Virus record (IMG/VR): IMGVR_UViG_3300029984_000001
Location: 186,001 to 250,000 of that record
Strand: one strand, 5' to 3'
DNA length: 64,000 nucleotides
The position numbers were made by a program, and so were the translations under genes. Below are positions 1 to 53,146 of this stretch, one piece after another (position 1 is the stretch's first letter; the number at the start of each line of letters is the position of its first letter). Under the pieces are notes generated by a model that saw only the letters and a program-made list of their open reading frames with translations, was not told the origin of the DNA and ran no database searches.

Positions 1-674
1 GGTTTATACATCTTACGACCTCCAGTTCTTAGATCTTCAAATATTTCTTTTTCAAATATTGCTAAATGTTTTAAAAGAGTAATTTGATCGAAGTTCTCTG
101 TGTTTAAGACATCTTCATACATAATTTGTTTTAATCTTTTTTGGGTAAATTTATTAGTGATAGATTTTTGCATTGCTAATCCCTTAATATCGAAATAACC
201 ACCCTTTATTAAATTTCCTTCTTGTATTTCTTGTATAGAAGCATAATTTTTTTTAACACCAGATAACAATATGGTCTTAAATAAGAATTCATTCTTCATA
301 ACAATAAGACATTCTTTTCCTTCTGCCCATGAGTGAGTATTCTTAGTGTATCTTTCCATATAATCATTAACAAAGTGTGTCAAGCAATAAGACATTATAT
401 TTATTATAGAATATCTAACCCCTTCTTGTGGAATAACCTTTAAAGGGTTTATCATCTTCTTCATTTGTATTACTTCATCATCATAGAATGAATAATCCAA
501 TTCATCTTCTACTCTTTCCATAAATTTAATAGGTTTAATAACATCACCAAATTCATCTTCTTTTAGTCTTTCCATGAAATCTATTGGAGTGTGTTTAATC
601 TTTAAATCCAAATCTTTTATCTTTGTAAGAGAGTATTGATAGAATGGATCTAAGCTCAATATTGAACTATCTGT
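1..674 (-). CDS. Family B DNA polymerase, exon 2 (runs off window start)
   Basis: Manual translation from 674 downward is open to base 1: TDSSILSLDPFYQY...MKNEFLFKTILLSGVKKNYASIQE...FDIKGLAMQKS (PolB KKNY and D-IKG motifs). Joined to exon 1 it restores ITD|TDS. Confidence 0.92.
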
Positions 675-1402
675 CGATTTTAGACTATATCATTTACCTA
701 TAACGAAATATATAGGCAACCTTCCACTTCCATTTAAAAAACTCTTATATCCTTATCACGGAACGGTTTTACTTATATAAAATATATAAGCTGTACTCTA
801 CTTGCTTCGTGTATTATTTCTAATACCTTATTTTCAACTAAAGAATTTCGACTTTAGTATATAGCTTTCGATAGTCGTTGAACAAAAATAAAATAACAAT
901 TTTAAAATTTATAATTTTTAGATACATCAATCCATAATATTCTATATTTAATTTTATATAGTAATTGTTTATACTTATTTCTATATCAAACCATTCTTTT
1001 ATTTTTTCTACTAAGATATGTATCTTTATTCATTATATCTCCCGAATTACTTACGAAATAATAATCTTTTACTATTGGTAAATATAATGATATTTGTCTC
1101 CATTCTTCTTGTAAATGTATTTGATCTCTTACCATGAATTGTTTATTCATATTTTCACCTCCTTCTTTGTAAGCTATCTAAAAATAAATTAATTGTTATT
1201 TTATTTCTGATGCTGATTATCCCTTGTTAATAACACTTAGCACCTTTACAGGCTTTTATTTCAGCTTATGTCAGGTTCATATATTGTTTTTACTTTCGTA
1301 ACCATTTCTCTTATAATTATGGTTTATGAACATTTGGGGAACTTCCAGCAATTCAAAAGGTTATTCGACTCTATATTACTATAGAGAAGGGACACAGAGT
1401 TT
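675..1402 (-). mobile_element. Group I self-splicing intron in DNA polymerase (728 nt)
   Basis: Minus strand shows P (AATTGCTGGAA), Q (AATCAGCA), R (GTTCAACGACTA, ~872-883) and S (ATGATATAGTCT, ~682-693) elements. The 5' exon ends in U and the intron ends in G. IGS UCUGU-GUCC pairs with 3' exon ACAGA (P10) and 5' exon GGAU (P1, U-G wobble). Confidence 0.92.
986..1150 (-). pseudogene. Truncated NUMOD4/HNH homing endonuclease remnant inside the DNA polymerase intron
   Basis: RBS GGAGGTG, then MNKQFMVRDQIHLQEEWRQISLYLPIVKDYYFVSNSGDIM...KRMV* (54 aa). EEW..I....Y.VSN.G is a NUMOD4-like start; there is no HNH motif. Confidence 0.7.
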
Positions 1403-2464
1403 ATCCGTTATACACACGACACTTCTAATCATATTATTGTACTTCTCGAGCCTGTTGAAATATTGAAACTTATAATATACATATTCTTCTAATAAATCTT
1501 TAAAGTATTCTAGTTCTTTTGAACCTAGACCACCATCAGGAAATTTTTTCTTATCAAATCCTGGTAATACATTAGGGTCCATATAAGGAGTATTCAGTTT
1601 TTGTAATATATCCATAAAAGCTTTATTTACATGAGGATTCTCTAAGAAATCATATAGATTATTCTTATAGTAAATTCTATTTACATTCTCTTGATTTAAA
1701 CCACATATAATATTGTATATAATATCACAATCTTTTTTAGATGGCACATAATTAAATCCACAAGTTCCTATTATTTTAGCGAAACAAGAATCTGCTGATA
1801 TATTTTCTGATAATATTATTTCATCCTTTAATTTTCTATCTACACTTTCACAAATAATATTATCTATAAATGTAATCACTTCATTTAAGCATTCAAACTT
1901 AACGTTGTTCGCTAAGAAAGCTTCAAAGAATAATCCTGCTGAGGATATACAACTCTTCGCTTGAGTAGTTATTGAAGAAGCAACATGTAAATCATATAAA
2001 ATGCAACTATATTGACCCAAGCATCCGTATAACGAATTCGTATCAATTTTAAATAGTAATTGAAGAAGATTATACTTTTCAAATTCTTCTGAACCCTTAG
2101 GGAATTTGAACATTGTGTTCTTAGCTTTCTTTCTATTATCAAGATAAGAAGAAATTAGTGGTATTAAAGGATTTCTACAATCTGCGTGCCGTTTAAAAAG
2201 CACTCCAGAAGCACACATTATAGGTTCTCTTGCTATTATATATTCTATTACATCTAGTAATGTACTATTAACAGTTTTTTCTGTATAACTATTATACAGT
2301 TTAGCTGTAGGGTTATTAAATCTTTTTCCTATAGAACTATCTACAGCACTTTCTAAATCATTCTTACTTAATCCTGGAAAATTTAAAGGTAACATTCTTA
2401 GTGCTACCTCTTTATATTTCTTAATAATCTGCTTATTGTCTAATTCTAAAGCACCACAAGCCAA
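1403..2464 (-). CDS. Family B DNA polymerase, exon 1 (phiKZ/AR9-type polymerase domain)
   Basis: KIDTNSLYG (PolB KxxxNSxYG motif); ends ...SVVCITD at the intron; TTG start after AAGGAG. The ORF-track tail KLCVPSL is intron sequence. Confidence 0.92.
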
Positions 2465-2490
2465 TTTTAACCAACTCCTTTTTTGTATTA

Positions 2491-2502
2491 TAATATGAAG
2501 TT
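2491..2502 (-). promoter_or_regulatory. AAC-N-N6-TA promoter (AACT-N6-TA) for DNA polymerase
   Basis: Matches the recurring AAC(A/T)-N6-TA motif, ~27 nt upstream of the start codon. Confidence 0.5.
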
Positions 2503-2540
2503 GACTTATAATTCATTTTCAATTATACCTTAAAATAGGT

Positions 2541-2552
2541 AACATTATAATA
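2541..2552 (+). promoter_or_regulatory. Late-type promoter AACA-N6-TA
   Basis: AACAttataaTA upstream of 2606; same consensus as AR9 late promoters. Confidence 0.6.
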
Positions 2553-2605
2553 AATTGTATTAAATACAAGTAAATATTATATATAATAACAAGGAGGAAT
2601 TTCTC

Positions 2606-3082: not shown

Positions 3083-3146
3083 TATAATTAATAAATTGGA
3101 TAGTGGTAAAACACTATCCATATTTTATGACCAATATATAATATAA

Positions 3147-3159
3147 TTATATATTATAC
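3147..3159 (+). promoter_or_regulatory. Early-type promoter TTATATATTATAC
   Basis: One of ~12 copies of TT(G/A)TATATTATA found just upstream of operons. Confidence 0.65.
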
Positions 3160-5924: not shown

Positions 5925-8045
5925 ATGAAAAGCGAATTTATTGATGACATTATACAAGACTTGAATGACATAGTTTTATACTATGATAACTATTATGTAT
6001 TTGCAGATTTTGCAAAAAATAAACAAATGATATTTGATGTAAGAACACTAAATATCAATAATTATGATGCTCATTATACTGGTATATTGAATCTGATGAA
6101 AGATACAATAGAAACAGAATATATGACAGATTACATGATTACATTAAAATTCGATGAAGATAAGTACTGTAAAATGAGTATACCTGATTTATGGATGAAT
6201 CTTATAATGTGGTATATCATAGTAAAGACAAATAGAGTAATTAAACCTAAATACATATTCTTTGAAGATTGTATCACAAAGAAAAACATTAAAGAGTACA
6301 TAGACAATTATCTTATAGATGAGTATACTACATCTATTGATATTATTGATTTAAATAATATTATTGATGATTGTCTTCATAAACTGTTAGATATTAATGA
6401 ATTTAGTATGTTCCTAGCTAATACTATCAACTTGGAAGACTTCGTAATACTAATGAATGAAGATCCAAGATTTAATGAATGTATACATGCCAATATAGGA
6501 AAAGACGTTCCTTTAGATGAAATAAAGAATGTAGGAATGGATTATACTATGGAAGCTGTAGAAAGAATTAAACAATCTAAACATGGATTGGCTAGTTTCT
6601 TTAGGGCACAAGAAGGAATTAATACGAAACAGTTTAAAGAGTTTGGTATCAATATTGGTACTAAACCAGACGGTATGGGTGGGATATTTCCTACAGTAGT
6701 AAATACAAACTTCTTAATTGGAGGTGTAAATGATTTACTATCATACCACATAGAATCCCATAGTGGGCGTCTTGCTCAAATAATAGTCGAAGATAACGTA
6801 TCCGATTCAGGATATTTTGCTAGACTATTGGGTATCAATAATATAGATTCTTTTAACCACGAAGATCCAAATTATGATTGTGGAACTAGAAATTTCGTAC
6901 CAGTTACTATAACTAGAAAGAATATAAGATTATACAATTCAAGGTTTTATAGAATGACTCCCAATGGTATGGAATATCTATTAAAAGAAACTGATACACA
7001 TTTATTTGACAAGACAATATTTTTACGTTCTCCAATGACATGTCGTTCTCATGTAGAAGGACATGGCATTTGTTATAAGTGTTATGGTCATCTAGCTTAT
7101 ATAGTTAGATTAATCAATGCAGGAAAAATAGCAGCAGAATTAATGTCATCTGAATTAACTCAAAAAATGCTATCTGCTAAGCATTTATTGGAAGCCGCAG
7201 TAAGAGCACTAATATGGAGTACAGGATTTGTTGACTATTTTATAGTCGATTGGAATAATTTGAAATTGAAACCTGATGTTGATTTTACTAATTGTAAACT
7301 TGTTATTGCAGCTAATACTATATGGATAGATTCTGAAGAAGAAGATGAAATGAGTGGGGAAATGAGAGAATATATTCCTAATTTCCATATTCAACTATCA
7401 GATGGTAATAGAATACAAATAAAAACTGCTGATTGTAATGACTTGTTTTTAACAGCTGATTTAAATAACTCTATAAGAGAATATGGAATACCTGGAGATA
7501 ATCATGAAATATTGATAGATCTAGATAAACTTAAAGGTTTACCTTTGTTCTCTGTAGATAATATTAATAACGATCTAAATGATACGTTAAATAAAATCAG
7601 AAAAACTATCAACCATAAAGATACAACAGAAGGTTTCAATATGCAACAAATTCTGGAAACATTACTGCATAATTTAGGAGAAGGAGGAATGCATTTATCA
7701 TCCGTACATGCAGAAACAATTATATCTAATCAAATCAGAAGTACAGATTTTATATTAGATAGACCCGATTGGAGTGTTCCTAATCAGAAATATAGAATAC
7801 TTGCACTTAAAACAGCTTTAACAAACCATCCTTCAATTAGTGTTACTATGGCATTTGAAGGTATTAAGGCTGCATTATACAATCCATTAACTTTTAAGAA
7901 GAATAAACCTAGTTTCTTAGATTTATTCTTTGTAGTAAAACCACAAGAATACCTTTCAGATAAAACAAAAGTTACTAAAACAACTTTTGGTGATAAAGAT
8001 TCGACTGGGAAAACGATATTTATGAAACGTGATAAATTAGAATAA
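5925..8045 (+). CDS. Multisubunit RNA polymerase beta' C-terminal subunit (probably non-virion RNAP)
   Basis: DSGYFARLL (bridge helix), LRSPMTC...GICYKCYG (Zn site) and GKIAAELMSSELTQKMLSAKH (trigger loop). The ~700 aa size and early-type promoter favour the non-virion enzyme. Confidence 0.92.
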   Translation: MKSEFIDDIIQDLNDIVLYYDNYYVFADFAKNKQMIFDVRTLNINNYDAHYTGILNLMKDTIETEYMTDYMITLKFDEDKYCKMSIPDLWMNLIMWYIIVKTNRVIKPKYIFFEDCITKKNIKEYIDNYLIDEYTTSIDIIDLNNIIDDCLHKLLDINEFSMFLANTINLEDFVILMNEDPRFNECIHANIGKDVPLDEIKNVGMDYTMEAVERIKQSKHGLASFFRAQEGINTKQFKEFGINIGTKPDGMGGIFPTVVNTNFLIGGVNDLLSYHIESHSGRLAQIIVEDNVSDSGYFARLLGINNIDSFNHEDPNYDCGTRNFVPVTITRKNIRLYNSRFYRMTPNGMEYLLKETDTHLFDKTIFLRSPMTCRSHVEGHGICYKCYGHLAYIVRLINAGKIAAELMSSELTQKMLSAKHLLEAAVRALIWSTGFVDYFIVDWNNLKLKPDVDFTNCKLVIAANTIWIDSEEEDEMSGEMREYIPNFHIQLSDGNRIQIKTADCNDLFLTADLNNSIREYGIPGDNHEILIDLDKLKGLPLFSVDNINNDLNDTLNKIRKTINHKDTTEGFNMQQILETLLHNLGEGGMHLSSVHAETIISNQIRSTDFILDRPDWSVPNQKYRILALKTALTNHPSISVTMAFEGIKAALYNPLTFKKNKPSFLDLFFVVKPQEYLSDKTKVTKTTFGDKDSTGKTIFMKRDKLE

Positions 8046-10906: not shown

Positions 10907-12517
10907 GTGATTAAGATTGTTGTGGAACATAGTAAAATTATTATAAATGATTACGATTTAGGTGATTGTGAATCTTTAGAGAATTTCTTTAGTATATTTG
11001 ATCCTAGTACACACACAAGATTTCCATTTGGAATGTATTATAAACAAGAAGAAAGACAATTAGTTATACCAAGAGGAGTAGATATTTCTTATATAAAGAA
11101 TAAATTTAATTGTATACCACAATTAAATAAAAGACACGATCCTATGGACAAGATAGAACCAATAAAATTAAGACACCCACCAAGAGATAATAATCAAAGA
11201 GAAACATTAAGATTTATGTTAGGAAAAAGTGAATATTATTATACAACAACAAAATCTATGTTAGCAGTAAATTTAGCTCCAGGAGTTGGAAAAACATATT
11301 GTTCTATAGCAACTTCAGCTTTCATTGGATATAGAAGTATAATGTTAACCTCATCATTATCATGGATAGAACAATGGAAACAAGAAATATTAAAATATAC
11401 AGATATTAAACCTAGAGAGATATTCATTATTGCAGGCACTCCATCTATTCATTCTATATTAAAACAAGGTGTACATAAATTTAAATTCATATTAGCTAGT
11501 ATGGATACAATTATATCATATGGTCAAAAATACGGGTTTGATAAAATATCTGAACTATTTGTAAAATTAAGAGTAGGAATTAAATATATAGATGAAGCTC
11601 ATTTAAATTTTAAAGCCATGATGTTGATAGATTTCTATACAAATACATATAAGAATTATTATTTAACAGGTTCCCCTTGTCGTTCTAGTGAAGACCAAGA
11701 TAGAATATATAAGATATATTTTAAAAATGTCCCTTCTATAGATTTATTTGATGAGACTAAAGATCCTCATACTGATTATTTAGGTATGAGATACAATTCT
11801 CATCCGACTGCGGCTGATATATCTTATTGTAAGAATAAATATGGATTAGATAGAAATAAATATACAGGGGATTATATTATAAGACGTCCTAATTTTTATA
11901 ATATCTTAAGAGTAATAATAGATAGAACTCTTGCTAAGAATGGTAAGATTTTATTTTATATAGGAGTAAATCGTTCAATAGAAGTAGTAAAAGCATGGAT
12001 GGAAATGTATTATCCTTTTTTAATTGGACATATAGGAATATACACAAGCACTACTTCAAAGGATATCAAAAGATCACAATTAGATAAAAAATATATACTA
12101 TCTACAACTAAATCTTGTGGAGCTGCTATGGATATAAAAGGTCTAGCTACTACTGTTATACTGGCTGAACCATTCAAATCGGAACCCTTAGCAATACAAA
12201 CTTTGGGTAGAACAAGAGATGACGATACTGAGTGTATAGAGGCTGTTGATGAAGGATTTAACGCCATAATGAGATTTTACTACCAAAAGCAACCTATTAT
12301 GAAAAAATATGCTTTGTCAGTAAATGATGTTAGATATAAAGATGAAACTCTAGAAGATAAGATAAATGAAATATTTGATAGATATTATGGTGATGGTGAA
12401 TTCCCTGTAATCTATATAGATAACAAAAAGATATTTATGCTAAGACAAGAATTAAGACCTATAAATGAATATGATTCTAAAGGAAGAAAAGTATTTATGA
12501 AAAGAGATAAATTTTAG
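10907..12517 (+). CDS. SF2 (DEAD/DEAH-like) helicase
   Basis: LAPGVGKT (Walker A), YIDEAH (Walker B), LTGSP and QTLGRTR motifs; GTG start after GAGGTG. Confidence 0.92.
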   Translation: MIKIVVEHSKIIINDYDLGDCESLENFFSIFDPSTHTRFPFGMYYKQEERQLVIPRGVDISYIKNKFNCIPQLNKRHDPMDKIEPIKLRHPPRDNNQRETLRFMLGKSEYYYTTTKSMLAVNLAPGVGKTYCSIATSAFIGYRSIMLTSSLSWIEQWKQEILKYTDIKPREIFIIAGTPSIHSILKQGVHKFKFILASMDTIISYGQKYGFDKISELFVKLRVGIKYIDEAHLNFKAMMLIDFYTNTYKNYYLTGSPCRSSEDQDRIYKIYFKNVPSIDLFDETKDPHTDYLGMRYNSHPTAADISYCKNKYGLDRNKYTGDYIIRRPNFYNILRVIIDRTLAKNGKILFYIGVNRSIEVVKAWMEMYYPFLIGHIGIYTSTTSKDIKRSQLDKKYILSTTKSCGAAMDIKGLATTVILAEPFKSEPLAIQTLGRTRDDDTECIEAVDEGFNAIMRFYYQKQPIMKKYALSVNDVRYKDETLEDKINEIFDRYYGDGEFPVIYIDNKKIFMLRQELRPINEYDSKGRKVFMKRDKF

Positions 12518-14056: not shown

Positions 14057-14794
14057 ATGAATTATATGGACTATGAAAAAATTTCAGATAGAGTAATGGA
14101 TTTGGGATATAATACTGTTTTAAAAATGAATGTTACTTTAGCAAAGAAAAATAAGGGTGGATATAGAAATCATTACTATAAAGAATATTCTTATAAAACT
14201 AATAAGTATATAGATAAAAGTACATTATGTAATATAAGTAGAAACTTCGATTATTTTTTATCTATTGAAAGATATAGCGAAGAAAAAGATTTCTTAATGA
14301 TAAGAGATGAAAATATGTTGGGATTAAGATTTGCATTAAAATCTTTGATGGATAATTGGTTTATAGAAAAACAAATATTTGCATCAAAGGATAATAGATT
14401 AATCATTATGCAAGGGTGGGAACCAATAGTAGCTATTATTTCAATGAATAAAAATTTAGTATTCACTCCAATAATAATACATAATGTAGATGATACATAC
14501 AGTCCAGCTGTTAGAATGTCTTATGGTTCAGATTATAGTTATACAGATATATCTTATACAAGACTTAATGCCTTTGTATATAATATAAATTCAATGTATT
14601 TATTCCAATTAGCACAAAATATGCTGAACTTTTTTCAACGTCCAGAATTAGGAACAAATTTAACATCTTATAATTATAATTCAGAGAGAGAAAATATGGA
14701 AGATGTTTCAGATGGAGGAGTTTCAGTTAAGGGAGGAAGTGATTTAGTATTGAAAAGAAAAAGAGATATATTTGATACTATAGACCAAATGTAA
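14057..14794 (+). CDS. Hypothetical protein
   Basis: 245 aa; AACC-N6-TA at 14023-14034; RBS GAGGTG. Confidence 0.75.
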   Translation: MNYMDYEKISDRVMDLGYNTVLKMNVTLAKKNKGGYRNHYYKEYSYKTNKYIDKSTLCNISRNFDYFLSIERYSEEKDFLMIRDENMLGLRFALKSLMDNWFIEKQIFASKDNRLIIMQGWEPIVAIISMNKNLVFTPIIIHNVDDTYSPAVRMSYGSDYSYTDISYTRLNAFVYNINSMYLFQLAQNMLNFFQRPELGTNLTSYNYNSERENMEDVSDGGVSVKGGSDLVLKRKRDIFDTIDQM

Positions 14795-23009: not shown

Positions 23010-23682
23010 ATGCAATCATTTATGTCAAGAGATCCAATTCCTATAAAAAATCACGATAAAATAGGATAAGTAAGTTACAATAATAATCAAACTTACATGG
23101 AAATAATTGATTATAAATCATATGGAAATATTGATATCATGTTGATTAACATATTATCTGATGGGACTATATATTACACAAAAAGAGAAAATAAAAGTAC
23201 TTGGGCTTTTCATAATGGAGGTATTAGTTGTATATTTGACAAAACAATATATAATGTAGGTTATATCGGAGGATATAAGTACTCATTAAACTCTAACTGT
23301 GCAACTAAATGGAGGGATATGTTGAGAAGGTCATATGATATATGGACCTAATACATGTTGTTTTTTACCAAATGATCTAAATATATTATTTAAAAAAGAA
23401 ACAAAAGAAACAGACCTACCAATAGGTGTATTTTTCATAAAAAGAGGAAAAGAAAAACCATATGGTGCAAGTATTAGTATTAATAATAAAACAAAGACTA
23501 TTGGGGTGTTTTCAACTTCAACTCCAGAAGAAGCTTTCTATGCTTATAAAGAAGCTAAAGAAGATTATATAAAAGAAATAGCAAATCATTATATGTATGA
23601 AAAAGGTGGACAATATATACCACAATATAGAGATGTCGTATATCCAGCTTTATTAAATTACAAAATAGAAATAGACGATTAA
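23010..23682 (+). pseudogene. Free-standing HNH/AP2-type homing endonuclease pseudogene
   Basis: RBS AAGGAGGTG and ATG 23010 (MQSFMSRD...KIG). In-frame TAA at 23067-23069, then a frame change and loss of the HNH core near 23340. KWRDMLRR, YGPNTCCFLP and LPIGV...YGASI...GVF...PEEAFYAYKEAKE match phage HNH-AP2 nucleases. Confidence 0.75.
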
Positions 23683-23752: not shown

Positions 23753-24535
23753 ATGAGCTTTGGAGACGTAGGGAATTATAATAACAACAATAAAAAAGAG
23801 GATTACAGAGTTACGACTTATTCAATGAATACATTTAGTAATTTAAATAGTGAGGTTGAAAAGTCTAAATTATCATTTACTTTTTGGAAAGGAATGTTAA
23901 AGATATCTATAGCACCACTTTTACCATCTAATGATGATAGTGTTAAATTTAACTATGACGATGAATCATCGATTTATTTATCACCATCTTTAGCGTATCA
24001 ATTAGATAAACAAATAGAAGTATTTATGAAAGATCCGACACAATTTGAAAGTAAAGGTATTAAGACTAGAAGTTTAGGTGTAATTAAAATAATTAGAGGA
24101 ACTAAGTTTGGGATTGAAGCTCCTTTATTATTAATTGAAAAATTAGATGAAAACAGAAATGTGGTAGGCGGTCATCTATATGAATTTAATACTAAAGAAT
24201 ATTATGGAATTGATAACTTTGACGAAGATGAATTTACATTTGAAAAGACTTACTTCGAACAATTAGAAATTGATTTCTTAAAGATAACTCTTAAAGGATT
24301 CTATGAAAGTTCAACTGGAGCACAAGCATATTTTAATATGGATTATTCAAGATTCGATCAAAATAGAGTTATGGGTAAATTAAACGGTATATCATCTGCT
24401 CTTGGTATTGAGAATAAGAAAGGATATAACAAGAATTATGGTGGAGGTGTAAAGAATGATCCATTTAATTCTAATTCATCTAAGTCGAATGATAATGAAT
24501 TTAACTATGATGATATAGAAAATCAATTTGAATAA
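23753..24535 (+). CDS. Putative ssDNA-binding/replication protein
   Basis: Beta-rich core with G/N-rich linker and acidic tail (EFNYDDIENQFE); AACT-N6-TA at 23704-23715. Confidence 0.4.
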   Translation: MSFGDVGNYNNNNKKEDYRVTTYSMNTFSNLNSEVEKSKLSFTFWKGMLKISIAPLLPSNDDSVKFNYDDESSIYLSPSLAYQLDKQIEVFMKDPTQFESKGIKTRSLGVIKIIRGTKFGIEAPLLLIEKLDENRNVVGGHLYEFNTKEYYGIDNFDEDEFTFEKTYFEQLEIDFLKITLKGFYESSTGAQAYFNMDYSRFDQNRVMGKLNGISSALGIENKKGYNKNYGGGVKNDPFNSNSSKSNDNEFNYDDIENQFE

Positions 24536-27960: not shown

Positions 27961-27995
27961 AATTATATATTATACTATTGAGGAGGGATTATATT

Positions 27996-29510
27996 ATGAA
28001 AAAATTTATGACTAGAGAACCTATTAAAAAATTCATTAATGTTTCAGATTGGGAACCTGAACCAGAAGACATAATAATAAATCAGATAAACGATTATGTA
28101 TTAATTCCTGTATCTAAATACTTTAATGCAGATCAAACAATGGATTATTTTTCAGTAAGATCAAAGAAAGTTTATAATAAAATTAAAGTAAGAGCTTTAA
28201 TAGTACATAAACTTAATTATTTCGAAAAGTTCTATGATACTGATAGAGAGTTATTAACTGTTTATGCTAATATTAAATACCTTATTGATTGTGAACCGAA
28301 TTATAGTAAAGATGCATTGTTCTATGATCTCAAAAGATACATAATAAATGGACCATCCATATCATTAAAAATGGATTATATGAATAAGGATAATTATAGA
28401 CCAGCTAAAATTAAATTTAGTGGTACAGATAGGTTATTATATTATGATAATACTCATATAGCTATAATGATGAGGATATCATTAACAATGACATTAATTA
28501 TTCCTTTATTAACACACTTCGCTAATAAAAGGAAAGTTCAAATAATAGATGAATTTCTATTAGAAATATACAGTTACATAATAAAGGAGTATGAAGATTT
28601 TGTAGATTTATTTGAAAAATTTACAGCAACTTGTTCTACTAATATAGCTAAGAATAAAAGAAACAATGCTATATGGAATAACCAAGACATAAGAGCTATT
28701 AATCAATCAACACATGCAATATATTCTGTCAATAATATTATACTTAATCTTATGCCTAAGTATATATATAATGATAGTCCAGTTACGCTTAATTATGCTA
28801 GTATAGGACAGGTAATAAAATATAAGGTAACCGACGCAGGATATGATTTTGCATATACTTCTTTATCATCTTCAGATAGGGATTTAGATGAAAATTCGTC
28901 TCTAGACAAATATGAGGCAATTCTTGTAAAAAGTGACGAATCACTATTCATTCAGAATAAGGTTAATGGTGCTACTACAATGTCTAGAATAAGAATGTAT
29001 TTTGGTCCTTTCGATCAAAATGAAATTGAGTTCTATAGAAAAAGACTTTTATTAGATGATAAGAGTGTTATACATGCTTTACAAAAAGAATTAATTTTTA
29101 ATATGTTCTATAAATACTTTGGTGATACTTCCTCTAGTAATACTATAACAGAAGATGATTATATAGTATTATTATTAACAGCTAAGAAGATTTGTTTACA
29201 ATCAGACTTACTTGTTTTACCTTGTGTGTTTAGTAGTAAGATAATCAAATATACAAAGAAAACAAAGTTAAATAAAAAAGAAAAAGATAGGATGATTGCT
29301 TCTCCTATTTATAAAATGATTATGGAGAAATATAATAATAATAAAAAGGTAGAAGCTCAAATAGAAGAATGGGCAGCCACTATATTATCATGTGAATTTG
29401 AAATTATAGATAGTAATAGAGAATCAAATAGTACTGATTATGTTGTACTACCTAAGTTTCCTGATTATGTAGTAAATGAGGTATTGAAATTTGCTTCTTG
29501 GGTATCATAA
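27996..29510 (+). CDS. Probable sigma-like promoter-specificity subunit of non-virion RNAP (AR9 gp226/phiKZ gp68-like)
   Basis: ~504 aa all-helical protein with an early-type promoter at 27963-27975. It lies two genes after the chaperonin, as recalled for AR9 gp228/gp226. Assignment is mostly by synteny and size. Confidence 0.45.
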   Translation: MKKFMTREPIKKFINVSDWEPEPEDIIINQINDYVLIPVSKYFNADQTMDYFSVRSKKVYNKIKVRALIVHKLNYFEKFYDTDRELLTVYANIKYLIDCEPNYSKDALFYDLKRYIINGPSISLKMDYMNKDNYRPAKIKFSGTDRLLYYDNTHIAIMMRISLTMTLIIPLLTHFANKRKVQIIDEFLLEIYSYIIKEYEDFVDLFEKFTATCSTNIAKNKRNNAIWNNQDIRAINQSTHAIYSVNNIILNLMPKYIYNDSPVTLNYASIGQVIKYKVTDAGYDFAYTSLSSSDRDLDENSSLDKYEAILVKSDESLFIQNKVNGATTMSRIRMYFGPFDQNEIEFYRKRLLLDDKSVIHALQKELIFNMFYKYFGDTSSSNTITEDDYIVLLLTAKKICLQSDLLVLPCVFSSKIIKYTKKTKLNKKEKDRMIASPIYKMIMEKYNNNKKVEAQIEEWAATILSCEFEIIDSNRESNSTDYVVLPKFPDYVVNEVLKFASWVS

Positions 29511-30593: not shown

Positions 30594-30915
30594 ATGGTAT
30601 ACATAATTAATGATAATAATGTGAAAGAATTATTAGAAAGCAATGATATTAAATTTAAATCTTTTGAAACGGTAATTAGATGCATTTTGTGATGAAGAAG
30701 CTACATATAGAATTGATCAATTTGAAGATGATTTTAAAGAAAAATTTACAGAAGAAGCCAAAGATAAATTACAGTGTAATTTATCTAATATATATAATGA
30801 TAATAATGAAAGTTTTATAAATTCAGATGAATTATATAATCTATCATGTAATGAGATAGATGATTTTATAGAAAGTCATAGAGGCAAAATGCAAATATTT
30901 ATGACTAGAGAATAA
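30594..30915 (+). pseudogene. Frameshifted acidic hypothetical protein ending in FMTRE
   Basis: RBS AAGGAGG and ATG 30594. The frame changes near 30665-30680 into LDAFCDEEATYRIDQ...GKMQIFMTRE*. Confidence 0.6.
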
Positions 30916-36227: not shown

Positions 36228-36434
36228 TTAATAAAATTCTATAGGAGTTAATTTCTTTTGTGTTTGTGGGAGTATTAAAGTAAAATTATATAATGCTTGT
36301 ACTGTTTCATTACTAGATACATGAACATTCTTTCCACCTAAATCTATATAGTATCTTTTAGAATTTATATATTCATCTAATTCTTTATTAGATTCAATTG
36401 TATAAGCTACTTTAGCGGTTAACTGATCACCATC
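36228..36434 (-). CDS. RNA polymerase beta' N-terminal subunit, exon 2
   Basis: Begins GAT GGT GAT CAG (DGDQ), completing the catalytic DYDGD after splicing; 68 aa. Confidence 0.92.
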   Translation of the reverse strand, partial: DGDQLTAKVAYTIESNKELDEYINSKRYYIDLGGKNVHVSSNETVQALYNFTLILPQTQKKLTPIEFY

Positions 36435-37665
36435 CACACATTAACCTATTGTGAACGCAACTTCACCAGAAGATTTTCATCTTCCCAGACTATATCATCC
36501 CTTATGGGCTACCTCTTTCGAATCTATCATAAGCTTATAGATCCTACTCTACTCAATATTAAAGTTATATTTATTTGATATTTCGGTATGAGATTCTTTT
36601 CTTTTTATCCTACCAATTATACTTCTTTGTTGTTGAAATTCCCCTGGTAGTTTCAATTCATCTATAATTGCTCTAGTTGAATATCCTTTAGATAATAATT
36701 TACAAATGTTTTCTACATATGGAAAGAAATCTATTTGAGGTTTCTTCTCTTTAAATTTATATAATGTGGATATATGTTTCCATCTTTTACCTTTAATAAT
36801 ATGACTTACATTAAATCTATTATTTTCAGTATTTTCCATATTAGATTTTATTAAAGCATTTCCATATGAATCTCCATCTTGAACATATTTGCAAATACTA
36901 TGTACTTGTTCTTCTGTCCATTTACTCATACCATTATTTTCTCCATAAGTATTTTCTCCAGTACCCCAACCTCCATCTTCCTTGACAAATCTTGATTCAA
37001 CATGTTTAGAAAATTCTCTATCTGTATCTTTATTTTGAAACTCATGTTCAAGATTTTCTAGTTGAGTACACCATTCTAAATTACCATAGAATGCATCTGA
37101 TCTACATAAATTTTTATGGTTTACTTGAGTTTTATTTATTGGGTCTGGATTAAATACATACATGGTAGCAACCAAAATATGTACAAAGAAAGATTTTCTA
37201 GTAGAATCATTTAATTGTAAAGATACTGATAAATATCCATTAGATAGTGCTACCGATAATAAATTACCTTCTATATTTAAAAATCTACCATAATTACTTA
37301 TCTTATAACCTGTTCTGATATTATAACATTGTAAATCTACCCATTGTTCTATAGGATTAGGATATTCTATTAATGGGTTTATACCTTGTGAGAAATCGTC
37401 TCTTATCATAAAACTTTTCATTTATTCTCATCTCCTTTCGTGTATATAATATATAACTTTAATATCTTTTGATAGTCGTTGAACGTTCCCTATACATCAT
37501 CATATAAGGCTTCGATGCTGATTACCCAATTATTAATCATTCTCAAGCATTCACGCTTATAGTTTCCCATTACGTTGTAGCTGATTAACTTACAAGGGCG
37601 TTCCAGCAGTTAAGGTAGTTTTTGTTTCGACGCACATCGTCAAGAAGACTACAATGGTGAGGTTT
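36435..37665 (-). mobile_element. Group I intron in RNAP beta' catalytic motif (1231 nt)
   Basis: P1: exon GGAGACUAU pairs with intron GUAGUCUUC, with U-G at the splice site. P (AACTGCTGGAA), Q (AATCAGCA), R (GTTCAACGACTA) and S (GATGATATAGTCT) elements present; terminal G at 36435. Confidence 0.95.
36549..37421 (-). CDS. Intron-encoded NUMOD4/HNH homing endonuclease
   Basis: EQWVDL...YKISNYGRF, GYLSVSL, FFVHILVA...QVNHKNLCRSDAFYGNLEWCTQLENLEH; GENNGMSKWTEEQV; RBS AAAGGAG. Confidence 0.92.
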   Translation of the reverse strand: MKSFMIRDDFSQGINPLIEYPNPIEQWVDLQCYNIRTGYKISNYGRFLNIEGNLLSVALSNGYLSVSLQLNDSTRKSFFVHILVATMYVFNPDPINKTQVNHKNLCRSDAFYGNLEWCTQLENLEHEFQNKDTDREFSKHVESRFVKEDGGWGTGENTYGENNGMSKWTEEQVHSICKYVQDGDSYGNALIKSNMENTENNRFNVSHIIKGKRWKHISTLYKFKEKKPQIDFFPYVENICKLLSKGYSTRAIIDELKLPGEFQQQRSIIGRIKRKESHTEISNKYNFNIE

Positions 37666-50496: not shown

Positions 50497-50600
50497 AAGT
50501 TCAATTATTTGATTATATATTATAAGTATGAATAACATATTGAAGTTGATTAATTTCAACTTCATATTTTATATTAAATTACATAGAGGAGAGAAATAAA

Positions 50601-50756
50601 ATGGATAATAAAATTGAACAAGAGGTAATTTTAATGGAAAATGAAATGGAAAACAATAGAGTCTTAAATGAAAACCTAATAGAAATAGACAGAGCATTTC
50701 AACAACAACAAATAATGGATATGCAAATTAATTTAGGATTTGGAATGGTATTTTAA
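50601..50756 (+). CDS. Small hypothetical protein (51 aa, not in ORF track)
   Basis: Early motif at 50513-50525; RBS GAGGAG. Confidence 0.55.
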   Translation: MDNKIEQEVILMENEMENNRVLNENLIEIDRAFQQQQIMDMQINLGFGMVF

Positions 50757-50781
50757 TAATAATAAAGAGGAGCGAAATAAT

Positions 50782-51261
50782 ATGAAATTAAGTATAGAAG
50801 CACAACAAAAAATAATGAATATCATGAGTATAAAATATAGTATATGTAGTTTAGAAGACTATAGAATCGTTAATATAGAAATATTTACAGAAGATGATAA
50901 ATCTATGGTAGACTTAAATTTTGATACTTCTTTGATTACAAAAGATAATATTGAATTTATTAAACTTATATTAAATAATATAGAAAATAATATGGATACT
51001 TGGGAAAAATTATATGATACTAAGAAAATTAAAAACTATTCTATAAATTTTGAAAAAAGATGTTTCGGAGTTGTATCTAATAATGAAGAAAATTTATCCA
51101 TCAATGATAATGATAAAATTTTAGAAAGATACATAACTGATAATGAAAATGAAATTATATTAGAAGAGACTTTATCGTTAAATTATCTTAGAGAAGGTAT
51201 GAAAGAATATATCAATGGAATACTATTAGAAATAGTTGCGGTTGTAGAATCAGAATTATAA
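50782..51261 (+). CDS. Hypothetical protein
   Basis: ATG 50782 after GAGGAG. Confidence 0.65.
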   Translation: MKLSIEAQQKIMNIMSIKYSICSLEDYRIVNIEIFTEDDKSMVDLNFDTSLITKDNIEFIKLILNNIENNMDTWEKLYDTKKIKNYSINFEKRCFGVVSNNEENLSINDNDKILERYITDNENEIILEETLSLNYLREGMKEYINGILLEIVAVVESEL

Positions 51262-51327
51262 AATGAGTAGAACTGGATTTTTCCAGTTCTATATTTTACG
51301 ATAAATAATATAAAGGTGGTAATACTA

Positions 51328-51792
51328 ATGAATACAAATATTGTAAAAGTAACAAATAATATATTAACAACAATGGGGTTAATGAATAAGAGTAAATACT
51401 CTTTATTTAAAGAAGAAAATGACATGGTATTAGAATTAGAACCAATTATAGATTGTCATATAGGAATTAACTTAGAAAGTATTAATAATGAAGCTAAAGC
51501 TTTTATTAAACTTCTTACAGATTCTATATCATTTGATGATGATAATTCATTATTTGAATTATATATAGATAATAAAATTAAGAATTTCTTCGTTGATTAT
51601 AATATAGGATTAATATATATAATTAATAAAGAGAACACAATTCATTGTGCATATGAATACGGTATTGAAGGTAAAGATTATATTACATTTGTAGATGAAT
51701 CAAATGATTCAATATTATATTTTGAAATAGCTAGTCATTTAAGTAAAGATATAATAATACAATCAGCAAGACAAATAATAAATTTAATTTAA
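51328..51792 (+). CDS. Hypothetical protein
   Basis: ATG 51328 after AAGGTGG. Confidence 0.65.
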   Translation: MNTNIVKVTNNILTTMGLMNKSKYSLFKEENDMVLELEPIIDCHIGINLESINNEAKAFIKLLTDSISFDDDNSLFELYIDNKIKNFFVDYNIGLIYIINKENTIHCAYEYGIEGKDYITFVDESNDSILYFEIASHLSKDIIIQSARQIINLI

Positions 51793-51806
51793 AGGAGAGA
51801 ATAATA

Positions 51807-52241
51807 ATGGTAAATATATTTACACTAAACTATGCTAATGATTGGATAATTGAAGAGGAACATGATATGATTAAAATTAAACCTAAGGATTTTAATCCTA
51901 TAAAAGCTGACTTTATAATTTCTAAAGAATATAAATTAATACCAATTCATATGAGAGAGATTGTAGAGATTCTGTATAATTTTTGTAATATACAAAGATT
52001 AAATAAAATGATGACTAAGGATTATCTTAAAAATATAAAATTAGTATCAGACACATTAATATTCTCATCAGAAAATATTATATTTACAATTATAAATAAA
52101 GAAAAAGGAGTTGAGATTCTTGTATTAGATAAAGATGAAAATTTGATACTAAATATATTATGTCATGAGTCTTATATAACGGAAGAAGATTATGATGTTA
52201 TATATGAAACTTGTAAAGAGATATTAAAGAAATTATTATAG
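51807..52241 (+). CDS. Hypothetical protein
   Basis: 144 aa; RBS AAGGAG. Confidence 0.65.
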   Translation: MVNIFTLNYANDWIIEEEHDMIKIKPKDFNPIKADFIISKEYKLIPIHMREIVEILYNFCNIQRLNKMMTKDYLKNIKLVSDTLIFSSENIIFTIINKEKGVEILVLDKDENLILNILCHESYITEEDYDVIYETCKEILKKLL

Positions 52242-52343
52242 ATGGGTTGTATAAAACAACCTTTTCTTTTTTATATAAAAAATATTATAATTATATATTA
52301 TAGTATTGGTAAACAGAATAAATATATTAAGGAGATTGATAAA

Positions 52344-53146
52344 ATGAAACAATTTATGAAAAGAGATAAAGAATTAAATAATGAAGTAATGGATGAAATA
52401 CATAATAATTTTATAGCATATGATTTTACAAGACCACAAATAATTCAACCACAAAATATTAGTAATGGATATGAAATGTGTCTGAATAATAGTTTCATTA
52501 ATCTAGAAGTTACAGAAGAAGATATATTAGACAATAAAGAGATAAGAAAGAATATGTTAGATAGAACTTCTGTTCTCGATAAAATTAAAGGTTTAGTTTT
52601 AATATCTAAATTAAATTATTGTACACTAAGAATGGTGTCAGAGTATTTTGAGATAGACTATCACACATTAGATAAATGTATTCAAAGAAATGAGGATGAA
52701 TTTGATAATGGTTTGATTAAAAAGACTGGTAGAGAGATTATAGAATTGATAAATAATTCTGTTTCATCGGACATTAAGTCCGTTCAAAAATCTAATAATG
52801 ATATAAATACACATAGAGGTGTTTTACTTACGATAATGAAAATTTTAATAACAAATCCAACACCTTATTAAATAAAAGAGTTATATTAAATATTGCTATG
52901 TTATTAAGAGATTCTGGAGTAGCTAAATATATAAGAAAAATGTTATTAGATAATACAGAAAATTGTCAATATAATAATTTATTACCTCAGGAATATTCTA
53001 ATGAATTGATAGAAAGTATACAAATAATTAAAGCTGGATTAAGAATGAATAGAACTTTATCTGATATTGAAATTGCTTATAAAAATGGTATAATAGATCA
53101 AAAAGAATATGTTTTATTAAAACAAGATCAAAATACTATTATTTAA
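52344..53146 (+). pseudogene. Phage DNA-binding (antirepressor-like) protein split by a one-base frameshift
   Basis: RTSVLDKIKGL...TLRMVSEYFEI...IQRNEDE and KRVILNIAMLLRDSGVAKYIR are two halves of one family. One extra T in 52822-52825 joins them; ATG 52344 follows AAGGAG. Confidence 0.65.

What the first reader, a model, noticed from the sequence alone, without database searches (positions are those of the whole stretch)
513..52367. Recurrent terminal peptide tag F-M-x-R-(D/E) restricted to DNA-acting proteins: candidate undescribed docking or targeting system
Seen in sequence, full FMxR[DE] occurs 8 times, always within about 10 residues of a protein end. C-terminal copies: RNAP beta'C IFMKRDKLE* (8019-8033), SF2 helicase VFMKRDKF* (12494-12508, with a second copy IFMLRQ at 12434), and the 30594 ORF IFMTRE* (30898-30912). 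N-terminal copies: sigma-like factor MKKFMTRE (28005-28019), RNAP-intron HNH MKSFMIRD (37398-37412, minus), polymerase-intron remnant MNKQFMVRD (1124-1138, minus), free-standing HNH MQSFMSRD (23019-23033) and antirepressor-like MKQFMKRD (52353-52367). DNA polymerase carries FMER twice in a loop just after DTDS (567-578 and 513-524, minus). Codons vary (TTT/TTC, AGA/CGT, GAT/GAC/GAA) and both strands are used, so the constraint appears to be on protein. I found no FMxR in any capsid, baseplate or head protein. My rough expectation from residue frequencies is about 1 FMxR and about 0.1 FMxR[DE] in the window's ~19,000 residues, versus 11 and 8 seen. Established analogy: in T4, DNA polymerase gp43, late sigma gp55 and co-activator gp33 share a terminal motif that binds the gp45 sliding clamp. 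Inference: this tag docks replication and transcription enzymes onto one phage hub (clamp, SSB or nucleoid scaffold) or imports them into a DNA compartment, and the homing endonucleases have acquired it to reach phage DNA.
Basis: partly seen in the sequence, partly recalled or inferred. Interest (0 to 1): 0.9.

Follow-up and report, generated by a model that had tools for sequence, protein, structure and literature searches.

The report
Shared address peptide on phage DNA enzymes
A short peptide (F-M-x-R-D/E here) is attached to the ends or loops of this giant phage's RNA polymerase, DNA polymerase, helicase and homing endonucleases. In related phages the same proteins all carry a different, genome-specific version, which marks it as an undescribed docking tag for one still unknown partner.

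Summary
FMxR[DE] is expected about 0.12 times in the window's ~19,500 residues. It occurs 9 times in true reading frames, 8 of them within 10 residues of a protein end (Poisson ~1e-12).

FMxR[DE] is only the local allele of a family-wide feature. In dozens of related uncultivated jumbo-phage genomes, these sites all carry a short hydrophobic peptide that differs from genome to genome but matches within each genome:
- the C-tail of non-virion RNA polymerase beta'C
- the N-terminus of the gp226-like sigma-like subunit
- the helicase C-tail
- a DNA-polymerase loop
- the N-terminus of a 245-aa protein family
- the N-termini of HNH homing endonucleases

Examples are LRQIY, VPATI, EPMIFF, KPFTI, LCTFN and SPIYF. 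Same-genome against cross-genome permutation tests give p = 5e-5 to 1e-2. Capsid, protease, chaperonin, SSB-like and primase controls show nothing. Synonymous codons vary freely at the conserved residues, so selection acts on the peptide.

The best reading is a short linear docking motif that co-evolves with one common receptor, most like the T4 clamp-binding tails. The receptor was not found. Entry into a DNA compartment, or recognition by an AAA+ machine, remain live rivals. Cultured relatives (AR9, BpSp, MarsHill) show no sign of the tag. I found no description of it in the literature.

The parts
8019..8033 (+). C-terminal tag FMKRD (then KLE, stop) on the non-virion RNA polymerase beta'C subunit (gene 5925-8045)
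   Evidence: The protein matches phrog_3015 over residues 53-669 and AR9 gp154, PDB 7S00_D, over residues 90-667. The tag therefore sits on a 37-residue extension beyond the fold. All but a few of the 120 homolog tails carry a peptide at this position.
12494..12508 (+). C-terminal tag FMKRD (then KF, stop) on the SF2 helicase (gene 10907-12517)
   Evidence: The helicase tail co-varies with the beta'C tail in 43 genomes, p=5e-5.
12434..12448 (+). Second, degenerate copy FMLRQ in the helicase tail
   Evidence: Two or three copies in the helicase tail are common in relatives (L100, L092, L132, L137, L094, L095).
28005..28019 (+). N-terminal tag (MKK)FMTRE on the gp226-like sigma-like nvRNAP subunit (gene 27996-29510)
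   Evidence: It is the ortholog of AR9 g226 by synteny GroEL-g227-g226-primase and matches phiR1-37 g245. Its N-terminus co-varies with the beta'C tail in 19 genomes, p=1e-4.
30898..30912 (+). C-terminal tag FMTRE (stop) on a 106-aa protein of unknown function downstream of the primase (ORF about 30594-30915, frameshifted in this window)
   Evidence: The positional ortholog in L005 keeps KVFMTREEETKED-stop while the rest of the protein diverges.
37398..37412 (-). N-terminal tag (MKS)FMIRD on an intact HNH/NUMOD4 homing endonuclease (gene 36549-37421)
   Evidence: NUMOD4 begins at residue 25, so the tag lies in front of the domain. HNH N-termini carry their own genome's allele, p=1.5e-4.
1124..1138 (-). 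N-terminal tag (MNKQ)FMVRD on an HNH/NUMOD4 remnant (986-1150) inside the insertion that splits the DNA polymerase gene
   Evidence: NUMOD4 from residue 15; polymerase pieces on both sides.
23019..23033 (+). N-terminal tag (MQS)FMSRD at the head of a broken free-standing HNH endonuclease (fragments 23010-23075, 23097-23351, 23335-23682)
   Evidence: The intact 294-aa ortholog in L005 begins MKNFMTRGE and has a second KKIFMTRS copy.
52353..52367 (+). N-terminal tag (MKQ)FMKRD on a 175-aa protein of unknown function (likely start 52344, end 52871)
   Evidence: AAGGAG 8 nt upstream of the ATG at 52344. No family match. A 269-aa protein elsewhere in the genome starts MKNFMKRDKE.
513..578 (-). Two FMER copies (567-578 and 513-524) in an inserted loop of the B-family DNA polymerase, just before the D-Y-x-F-Y motif
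   Evidence: The orthologous loop carries the local allele in other genomes (LCTFN, GMVYE, IRPFVI, KAFGS, MVKVI). Permutation p=0.011.
56881..56895 (+). Internal FMVRE in a PC4-like single-strand-binding protein (gene 56668-57075). Its status as a tag is uncertain.
   Evidence: PF02229 over residues 32-67; the motif is at residue 72. No relatives were available to test it.

Best explanation
FMxR[DE] is this phage's version of a short linear docking peptide.

Where the peptide sits: on flexible ends or loops outside the folded domains of
- the non-virion RNA polymerase (beta'C and the sigma-like gp226 homolog);
- the DNA polymerase;
- the SF2 helicase;
- several small unknown proteins;
- the phage's homing endonucleases.

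What is shown:
- The peptide is far over-represented and terminal.
- Selection acts on the amino acids.
- Across a large clade of uncultivated AR9-related jumbo phages, every genome has its own allele, and that allele is shared by the same set of proteins in that genome.

What is inferred:
- All carriers bind one common receptor pocket that co-evolves with the peptide.
- The receptor is most likely phage-encoded.
- Most likely the receptor is a hub that sits on or around replicating phage DNA. It gathers polymerases, helicase, the sigma-like factor and endonucleases there, as the T4 sliding clamp does through the clamp-binding tails of gp43, gp55 and gp33.
- Repeated copies on the helicase, the DNA polymerase and some beta'C tails would add avidity for an oligomeric receptor.
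- Homing endonucleases have picked up each host phage's allele because it gives them access to the DNA.
For: - Enrichment and terminal position.
- The tags lie outside the conserved domains.
- The closest relative (50-80% identity, syntenic) keeps FMxR at all three orthologous sites available. It adds two more copies on an HNH gene inserted into its gp226 gene.
- Homolog tails drift gradually: FMKRD, IIMKRD, IVYKRI, LFVKV, and EPMIFFED in a further clade.
- Genome-by-genome covariation is visible by eye in 19 genome pairs and with genome-specific patterns.
- Permutation tests against the beta'C tail: helicase tail p=5e-5, n=43; gp226 N-terminus p=1e-4; DNA-polymerase loop p=0.011; 245-aa family N-terminus p=3e-4 (all three).
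- HNH N-termini against their own genome's anchors: p=1.5e-4.
- 29 control tests on the ends of the major head protein, protease, GroEL-like, SSB-like, 27163, primase and structural families give two nominal hits (p=0.014 and 0.023). Neither would survive correction.
- Synonymous codons differ at conserved tag residues within genomes, for example P as CCA/CCT/CCC/CCG and R as CGT/AGG/AGA/CGA/CGG.
- About 73 kb more of the same genome yields four further tags, all terminal, and none in the structural giants.
- The T4 precedent is a clamp-binding motif attached through a linker to gp55 and gp33, binding a hydrophobic patch on each gp45 protomer (PMC7892883).
Against: - No receptor was identified.
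- No clamp or clamp loader was recognised in the window or in the roughly 137 kb of the genome read. About half of the genome remains unseen, and family libraries miss most proteins of this phage.
- The two conserved unknowns I modelled are not clamp-like. 23753 has a Whirly/PUR/PC4-like single-strand-binding fold. 27163 has a fold with no PDB match.
- A crude mirror-tree test found no conserved neighbour whose divergence tracks tag divergence.
- A clamp-type hub does not obviously explain why most selfish endonucleases carry the tag.
- The tag is N-terminal, C-terminal or internal, unlike the strictly C-terminal T4 tails.
- Binding has not been shown by any method.
Confidence: 0.5

Rival explanations
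1. The peptide is an address label for entry into a DNA-containing compartment or exclusion zone, a functional analogue of a nuclear localisation signal. Each protein or pre-assembled complex that must reach phage DNA carries it. Homing endonucleases must acquire the local label to reach their targets.
For: - The carrier set (nvRNAP core subunit, dissociable sigma-like subunit, DNA polymerase, helicase, homing endonucleases) matches what nucleus-forming phages import. Virion, metabolic and chaperonin proteins are untagged.
- HNH endonucleases consistently carry the local allele. This is easier to explain by obligatory access control than by a processivity hub.
- One tag on a core subunit plus one on the dissociable sigma-like factor fits import of assembled complexes. 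PhiKZ nvRNAP import is licensed at the complex level (bioRxiv 10.64898/2026.09.21.753271).
Against: - AR9-like phages lie outside Chimalliviridae and lack chimallin (PMC13282480). No shell-like gene was recognised in the parts read.
- In phiKZ, the import work I read describes import factors and subunit interactions rather than a linear signal.
- The SSB-like protein, primase, RusA and RNase H, which also need DNA, are untagged. They would have to piggyback.
Confidence: 0.25
2. The peptide is a recognition tag for a phage-encoded AAA+ unfoldase, possibly working with an HslV-like peptidase. The machine would pull tightly bound enzymes (RNA polymerase, ring helicase, DNA polymerase, endonucleases) off phage DNA or turn them over, for instance before packaging.
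For: - Unstructured terminal or loop peptides at either end are what AAA+ unfoldases typically engage (established knowledge of ClpX, Cdc48/VAT and PAN).
- This genome encodes three tandem classical-AAA ATPases of 323, 340 and 386 aa. Their best PDB matches are AFG2, VAT, Cdc48/p97 and BCS1 at about 1e-29.
- It also encodes an HslV-family peptidase.
- The carriers are the proteins that bind DNA most persistently.
Against: - Homologs of the AAA genes turned up in only four contigs of the tagged family, and not in the other tagged genomes sampled. The search has limited sensitivity.
- The AAA proteins and the peptidase are not adjacent to each other or to any tagged gene cluster.
- There is no evidence of proteolysis.
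Confidence: 0.12
3. The identical short hydrophobic strands bind one another. This homotypic beta-strand pairing would knit the carriers into a co-assembly or condensate without a separate receptor.
For: - Within a genome the copies are near-identical and rich in beta-formers and aromatics.
- Several carriers hold two or three copies, as expected for multivalent stickers.
Against: - There is no direct evidence.
- Concerted change of a self-pairing peptide on eight or more proteins would be harder than drift with a tolerant pocket.
- Charged flanks differ between carriers.
Confidence: 0.05
4. The motif is a by-product: chance in an AT-rich genome, a DNA or RNA signal (promoter, ribosome-binding context, intron boundary) that happens to be translated, or simply part of the HNH/NUMOD4 domain.
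For: - The genome is 25.6% GC, so F, M, K, R (as AGA) and D codons are common.
- Five copies follow a start codon.
- Three or four copies are on HNH genes, and two lie in or next to gene insertions.
Against: - Composition predicts 0.12 copies.
- Every copy followed by D/E lies in a true reading frame, on either strand. Out-of-frame FMxR hits lack D/E.
- Synonymous variation at conserved residues is abundant.
- C-terminal and internal copies exist.
- The peptide precedes the NUMOD4 domain and also occurs on RNA polymerase, helicase and DNA polymerase.
- Covariation across genomes is incompatible with chance.
Confidence: 0.01

Closest known systems
T4-type sliding-clamp-binding motif (SCBM) on gp43, gp55 and gp33, binding the gp45 clamp
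   Same: - A short hydrophobic peptide on a flexible linker.
- Shared by the replicative polymerase, a sigma-like promoter-specificity factor and an RNA-polymerase-associated protein of a phage.
- One receptor serves many clients and couples replication with transcription (PMC7892883).
   Different: - No clamp or loader was found here.
- The tags can be N-terminal, C-terminal or in a loop.
- The carriers include a core RNA polymerase subunit, a helicase and homing endonucleases.
- The sequence has no resemblance to the T4 tails as I recall them.
- The peptide diverges strongly between related genomes.
Bacterial beta-clamp-binding motif (QL[SD]LF-type) and eukaryotic/archaeal PIP box
   Same: - Short linear motifs, often terminal and sometimes internal or N-terminal.
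- Shared by many DNA enzymes that use a 'tool-belt' hub.
- Alleles in one other clade (QPMIF, QPMEF) look superficially similar.
   Different: - Those motifs are conserved across whole domains of life, because the host clamp pocket is conserved.
- Here the peptide is genome-specific. The window's allele FMxR[DE] does not fit either consensus.
- This argues for a phage-encoded, co-evolving receptor rather than the host clamp.
Selective protein import into the chimallivirus phage nucleus (Imp1/PicA and other Imp factors)
   Same: - The same functional class of cargo: nvRNAP, replication enzymes and an intron-encoded HNH endonuclease.
- Structural and metabolic proteins are excluded.
   Different: - That system belongs to Chimalliviridae with a chimallin shell. 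In what I read, cargo is selected through import factors and subunit interactions, with no linear tag described.
- The present clade is AR9-related, and AR9-like phages lack chimallin.
Terminal degrons recognised by AAA+ unfoldases (ssrA-type and N-terminal ClpX motifs)
   Same: - Short unstructured peptides that work at either terminus.
- The genome encodes AAA unfoldase-type ATPases and an HslV-like peptidase.
   Different: - There is no evidence of degradation.
- The AAA genes do not track the tag across genomes.
- The carriers are essential enzymes rather than regulatory targets.

Membership tests
T4-type clamp-binding motif system | A phage-encoded sliding clamp (gp45-like) and clamp loader are present | tested here: inconclusive
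   No PHROG or Pfam match to a clamp or loader among about 70 window ORFs or the flanks read. The three AAA genes belong to the Cdc48/BCS1 clade, not the RFC clade. Half of the genome is unread and most ORFs match no family.
T4-type clamp-binding motif system | The motif lies at the extreme C-terminus of the clients, on a linker | tested here: not met
   It is C-terminal on beta'C, the helicase and two small proteins. It is N-terminal on the gp226-like subunit, the HNHs and others, and internal in the DNA polymerase.
T4-type clamp-binding motif system | Clients include the replicative polymerase and the late sigma-like factor | tested here: met
   The DNA-polymerase loop and the gp226-like N-terminus carry the tag and co-vary with the other carriers.
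Host beta-clamp-binding motif (QL[SD]LF-type) | The peptide fits the conserved consensus, which stays stable across phages that infect different hosts | tested here: not met
   FMxR[DE] does not fit. The alleles differ radically between related genomes (LRQIY, VPATI, KAFS, LCTFN, EMCKIV). The consensus itself is recalled from memory.
Chimallivirus nuclear import | A chimallin shell protein is encoded | tested here: inconclusive
   Nothing was recognised in the window by PHROGs or Pfam. Three large unknown ORFs gave no match to PDB sequences, and I did not check that chimallin structures are in that library. A review states that AR9-like phages lack chimallin. Half of the genome is unread.
Chimallivirus nuclear import | Cargo is recognised through import factors and folded-surface or subunit interactions, not a linear tag | tested here: not met
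   Here the shared feature is a linear terminal peptide.
NUMOD4/HNH endonuclease N-terminal domain | The motif is part of the NUMOD4 or HNH domain | tested here: not met
   NUMOD4 starts at residue 25 (HNH 36549-37421) and at residue 15 (remnant). The tag occupies residues 4-9, in front of it. The same peptide also occurs on non-HNH proteins.
AAA+ degron | A cognate unfoldase co-occurs with the tag across genomes | tested here: inconclusive
   The AAA trio is present in this genome. Homologs were found in only four contigs of the tagged family and in none of the AR9-like phages. The search works from peptide patterns and may miss divergent copies.
Capsid-targeting sequence of packaged proteins (T4 internal proteins) | An N-terminal peptide on proteins that end up in the virion | tested here: not met
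   The carriers are non-virion enzymes (beta'C matches the AR9 non-virion polymerase chain) and the tags occur at both ends. The head, protease and virion protein families are untagged.

The most novel reading that the evidence does not exclude
A large clade of jumbo phages without chimallin uses a genome-specific linear peptide as a 'postcode'. The postcode licenses proteins to reach the replicating phage genome, either by entry into a compartment or exclusion zone or by mandatory docking on a gatekeeper. Selfish homing endonucleases must copy each phage's postcode to survive. This would be the first linear targeting signal for a viral DNA compartment in bacteria, and a ready-made handle for sending any protein to phage DNA.
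Probability: 0.25. Interest if true: 0.92.

Novelty: new variant of a known kind. Interest (0 to 1): 0.82.

Why it matters
The finding gives a concrete, testable handle on how a big, uncultivated group of giant phages organises replication and transcription. One small peptide appears to define which proteins belong at the phage DNA.

Each genome has its own allele on the same proteins, so the family is a natural specificity-swap experiment. That should let the receptor be found by complex prediction or pull-down, with built-in cross-genome controls.

It also shows selfish homing endonucleases adapting to their host phage's internal addressing. This is a new angle on how mobile elements persist in phage genomes.

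If the receptor is a clamp-like hub, it extends the T4 paradigm of replication-coupled transcription to phages with their own multisubunit RNA polymerases. If it is a gate to a compartment, it would be the first linear import signal of that kind.

Tried and rejected
1. Chance or composition. Rejected by expectation and shuffles.

2. A DNA or RNA element translated by accident. Rejected because all D/E-bearing copies are in true frames, and because synonymous codons vary at conserved residues in ten genomes.

3. An artefact of intron or exon boundaries or of the HNH domain.
- The tags precede NUMOD4 and also occur on uninterrupted genes.
- Rfam found no group I intron at gathering threshold.

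4. The conserved unknown ORFs 23753 and 27163 as clamps.
- Profile searches of the PDB were empty.
- AlphaFold models with Foldseek show a Whirly/PUR/PC4-like single-strand-binding fold for 23753. They show an unmatched alpha/beta fold with a lysine-rich tail for 27163, similar only to uncharacterised phage proteins, one of which (UniProt G4KKI2) I take from memory to be a phiR1-37 protein.

5. The 245-aa tagged family (14057). No PDB, Pfam or informative PHROG match, and no relation to the SSB-like family.

6. A mirror-tree residual test for a co-evolving receptor among nine conserved families. Nothing significant.

7. The AAA trio as clamp loader. It belongs to the Cdc48/BCS1 clade and its phyletic spread does not match the tag.

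8. The tag in cultured relatives.
- AR9 beta'C lacks the extension.
- The beta'C tails of AR9, BpSp and MarsHill share an acidic-hydrophobic ending, and their helicase tails look weakly alike. Their gp226 N-termini do not mirror either. I do not claim the system exists there.

9. A complete proteome scan of this phage. Only about 137 of 264 kb could be reached.

Full report
**What the window is.** The 64-kb window is 25.6% GC. It is part of IMGVR_UViG_3300029984_000001, a 263.6-kb viral contig; a second contig of 143.9 kb is essentially identical. No close relative exists among 50,697 deposited phage genomes. The nearest cultured relatives are the AR9/PBS1 group, staphylococcal jumbo phages and phiR1-37, at about 25-31% protein identity.

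Genes identified in the window:
- A B-family DNA polymerase split by an insertion that holds an HNH remnant.
- The beta'C subunit of the non-virion RNA polymerase. It matches AR9 gp154, PDB 7S00 chain D, over residues 90-667 of 706.
- An SF2 helicase.
- A prohead protease, the major head protein and virion proteins.
- A GroEL-like chaperonin and a primase.
- An RNA polymerase beta-like subunit that does not match the AR9 non-virion enzyme.
- A dCTP deaminase and a PC4-like protein.

The 504-aa 'sigma-like' protein is the ortholog of AR9 g226 by conserved gene order chaperonin-g227-g226-primase. It also matches phiR1-37 g245.

**Checking the observation.**
- On a 73-gene, 19,554-residue set, composition predicts 0.82 FMxR and 0.12 FMxR[DE]. 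Residue shuffles never gave more than 5 and 2.
- That set holds 10 FMxR and 7 FMxR[DE]. Across all true reading frames there are 9 FMxR[DE], because two lie in ORFs left out of the set. Eight of the nine lie within ten residues of a protein end.
- Out-of-frame FMxR matches never have D/E next.
- The tags lie outside the recognised domains. In beta'C the tag sits on a 37-residue extension beyond the end of the AR9 homolog. In the helicase it lies beyond the matched core. In the HNH proteins it lies in front of NUMOD4.

- A ninth, internal copy exists in the PC4-like protein (56881).
- The free-standing HNH at 23019 is broken.
- The small ORF ending at 30912 is frameshifted in this contig and intact in the other.

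**Relatives.**
- The closest relative found is IMGVR_UViG_3300030294_000015. It is syntenic at 50-80% identity and keeps FMxR at all three orthologous sites available: the gp226-like N-terminus, the intact free-standing HNH and the small ORF after the primase. Its gp226 gene is split by another HNH gene that carries two copies.
- More distant gp226 homologs have no FMxR.
- The C-terminal tails of 120 beta'C homologs explain why. All but a few tails end in a short hydrophobic peptide, often with basic or acidic flanks, after a polar linker. The peptide drifts with distance: FMKRD, IIMKRD, IVYKRI, LFVKV, IINPFIHID, YEPMIFFED.

**Covariation, the key result.** I fetched the loci around the gp226-like gene (69 loci) and around beta'C (80 loci) from IMG/VR. 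Nineteen genomes could be paired through their contig names. In genome after genome the same peptide appears on the beta'C tail, the gp226-like N-terminus, the helicase tail and the HNH N-termini, and it differs between genomes:

| Beta'C tail | gp226-like N-terminus | Helicase tail | HNH N-terminus |
|---|---|---|---|
| LRQIYIK | LRQIYRK | PRVIYRF | |
| VVPATI | IVPATI | IPAFI, VPAFI | |
| EPMIFF | EPMEFH | QPMEFA | QPMIFEEW |
| IEMVKIV | IEMCKIV | VMCTTV | |
| KLCTFNK (twice) | KRLATF | | |
| VKPFTIN | IKPFTIH | | |
| KAFSQ | KAFSY | KAFNY | |
| SMFVK | SMFTK | RMFID | |

Scanning each genome with its own pattern added further carriers:
- a loop of the DNA polymerase just before the D-Y-x-F-Y motif, the same place as the two FMER copies in the window;
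- the N-terminus of the 245-aa family of window ORF 14057 (untagged in the window's own clade);
- several small proteins.

**Permutation tests.** Each test compared same-genome with cross-genome best 5- or 6-residue matches.

| Comparison | p | n |
|---|---|---|
| Beta'C tail vs helicase tail | 5e-5 | 43 |
| Beta'C tail vs gp226 N-terminus | 1e-4 | 19 |
| Beta'C tail vs DNA-polymerase loop | 0.011 | 19 |
| Beta'C tail vs 245-aa family N-terminus | 3e-4 | 31 |
| HNH N-termini vs own genome's anchors | 1.5e-4 | 19 |

The same test was run on both ends of the major head protein, protease, virion proteins, chaperonin, SSB-like protein, ORF 27163 family and primase. Of 29 such control tests, two gave nominal p of 0.014 and 0.023, which would not survive correction.

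**Peptide or nucleic acid?** Within single genomes the conserved residues of the different copies use different synonymous codons: four proline codons, five arginine codons, both serine codon families, and all isoleucine, tyrosine, phenylalanine and glycine alternatives. Together with the fixed reading frame on both strands, this places the constraint on the peptide.

**More of the same genome.** By walking along contigs I read about 73 kb outside the window.
- The left flank holds tail genes.
- The right flank, which wraps round the contig, holds giant 2910-aa and 1742-aa proteins, RusA, thymidylate synthase, an HslV-family peptidase, a DNA methyltransferase, an NrdD gene in three pieces, three tandem AAA ATPases and an RNase H.
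- Four further tags turned up, all terminal:
  - MKKFMNRE at the start of a 98-aa protein;
  - FMERG at the very end of a 258-aa protein;
  - MKNFMKRDKE at the start of a 269-aa protein;
  - KVFMVRDKPKNLQVI at the end of a 274-aa phrog_12252 protein.
- None lies in frame in the structural giants.
- RusA, RNase H, the methyltransferase, thymidylate synthase and the AAA proteins are untagged.

**Searching for the receptor.**
- No clamp, clamp loader or shell protein was recognised by PHROGs or Pfam.
- ORF 23753 is conserved, 260 aa, and has an acidic aromatic C-tail. Its model has a Whirly/PUR/MRP/PC4-like fold, so it is probably the phage's single-strand-binding protein.
- ORF 27163 is the AR9 g227 ortholog, always next to the gp226 gene. 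It gives a confident model (pLDDT 85) with no PDB match, plus a disordered lysine-rich tail. It resembles only uncharacterised phage proteins, one of which (UniProt G4KKI2) I take from memory to be a phiR1-37 protein. It remains a candidate DNA-anchored adaptor, but nothing links it to the tag.
- A mirror-tree residual test over nine conserved families gave nothing.
- The three AAA ATPases belong to the Cdc48/AFG2/VAT/BCS1 clade. Homologs were found in only four contigs of the tagged family.

**Cultured relatives.** AR9 beta'C ends where the fold ends. The beta'C tails of AR9, BpSp and MarsHill share an acidic-hydrophobic ending, and their helicase tails look weakly similar. Their gp226 N-termini do not mirror either. 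I therefore do not claim the system outside the uncultivated clade.

**Literature.**
- Full-text searches for a linear motif or targeting signal in jumbo phages found nothing on this.
- A 2026 preprint on phiKZ says that how nvRNAP is selected for import was unknown. It implicates import factors and subunit interactions and mentions no linear tag.
- A 2026 review states that AR9-like phages lie outside Chimalliviridae and lack chimallin.
- The best-documented analogue is the T4 clamp-binding motif on gp55 and gp33, attached through a linker and binding a hydrophobic patch of gp45 (PMC7892883).

**Interpretation.**
- Shown: a terminal or loop peptide, selected as peptide, is shared by a defined set of DNA and RNA enzymes and homing endonucleases. 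It changes in concert from genome to genome.
- Inferred: the copies bind one co-evolving receptor. The gradual drift of the tail peptide with phylogenetic distance fits slow co-evolution with a tolerant pocket. Multiple copies on the helicase and polymerase fit an oligomeric partner.
- I rank a DNA-associated hub first, by analogy with T4 and because polymerase, helicase and the sigma-like factor are classic hub clients.
- The consistent tagging of selfish endonucleases, and the pattern of one tag on the RNA polymerase core plus one on its dissociable factor, keep a compartment or gatekeeper reading seriously in play.
- An AAA+ extraction or turnover tag is a third option, raised by the genome's own gene content.
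- No step in this work needed to be referred.

Noticed in passing
window 30594-30915 (frameshift near 30674): The small tagged ORF is interrupted here by one extra T (GGTAATTAGATG against GGTAATAGATG) relative to the otherwise identical 143.9-kb contig, where it is an intact 106-aa gene. This is either an assembly error or a real polymorphism.
   Followed up: partly
window 1-2464 (minus strand): The DNA polymerase gene is split just after the DTDS motif by about 720 bp that hold a 54-aa HNH/NUMOD4 remnant. Relatives have one continuous gene of about 700-726 aa. Rfam reports no group I intron at gathering threshold, so the nature of the insertion is open.
   Followed up: partly
window 23010-23682: A free-standing HNH endonuclease has decayed into three ORFs. 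Bases 23521-23577 are 89.5% identical at DNA level to HNH genes of Acinetobacter phages Ab3/Ab5/Ab7, an odd match for a 25% GC phage.
   Followed up: no
window 23753-24535: A conserved 260-aa protein with an acidic, aromatic C-terminal tail models as a Whirly/PUR/MRP/PC4-like fold (Foldseek E=4e-5). It is probably the phage's single-strand-binding protein, of a type not annotated in jumbo phages.
   Followed up: yes
window 27163-27960: This is the AR9 g227 ortholog, always adjacent to the gp226-like gene. Its AlphaFold model is confident (pLDDT 85) and has no PDB match, plus a disordered lysine-rich tail. Only uncharacterised phage proteins resemble it, one of which (UniProt G4KKI2) I take from memory to be a phiR1-37 protein.
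   Followed up: yes
window 14057-14794 and orthologs (alignment A4); window 23753-24535 orthologs (A3): The 245-aa family ends in a conserved [KR]-S-F-F-D peptide, and the SSB-like family has S-F-F followed by acidic residues near its end. This may be a second, conserved (not genome-specific) tail motif.
   Followed up: no
L164:16611-20142 (same genome, outside the window): Three tandem classical-AAA ATPases (323, 340 and 386 aa) have their best PDB matches in AFG2, VAT, Cdc48/p97 and BCS1. A 115-aa ORF lies between them. Gene content like this is unusual for a phage and has no assigned role.
   Followed up: partly
L163:13160-13762 (same phage, outside the window): A 200-aa HslV-family (proteasome-like) peptidase is encoded among early-looking small genes, near thymidylate synthase and a HAD phosphatase.
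   Followed up: no
L164:11270-14323 (same genome, outside the window): The anaerobic ribonucleotide reductase NrdD is encoded in three pieces separated by about 460-580 bp gaps without ORFs. These may be introns. The gene also points to an anaerobic host.
   Followed up: no
window 27940-27995, 37425-37470 (minus strand), 52290-52343: An AT-rich TATATTAT-type element lies about 20-35 nt upstream of the Shine-Dalgarno sequence of several tagged genes. It may be a shared (early or middle) promoter.
   Followed up: no
window 61127-63754 and L156:3180-7705: A run of at least five paralogous genes of about 340-390 aa, several starting MGRYSS or MGxY, lies on the minus strand. Their function is unknown.
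   Followed up: no
window 36228-36437 (minus strand): A 69-aa ORF downstream of the HNH gene and the RNA polymerase beta-like gene ends in K-K-L-T-P-I-E-F-Y. This resembles the P-I-E-F alleles of other clades rather than FMxR. I could not tell whether it is a terminal exon of the polymerase subunit.
   Followed up: no
L005:10001-13097: In the closest relative the gp226-like gene is split after about residue 320 by a 382-codon HNH ORF that has no ATG in front of its first tag. Several more distant relatives also have HNH genes at or just after this position (L041, L042, L045, L049, L053, L057).
   Followed up: partly
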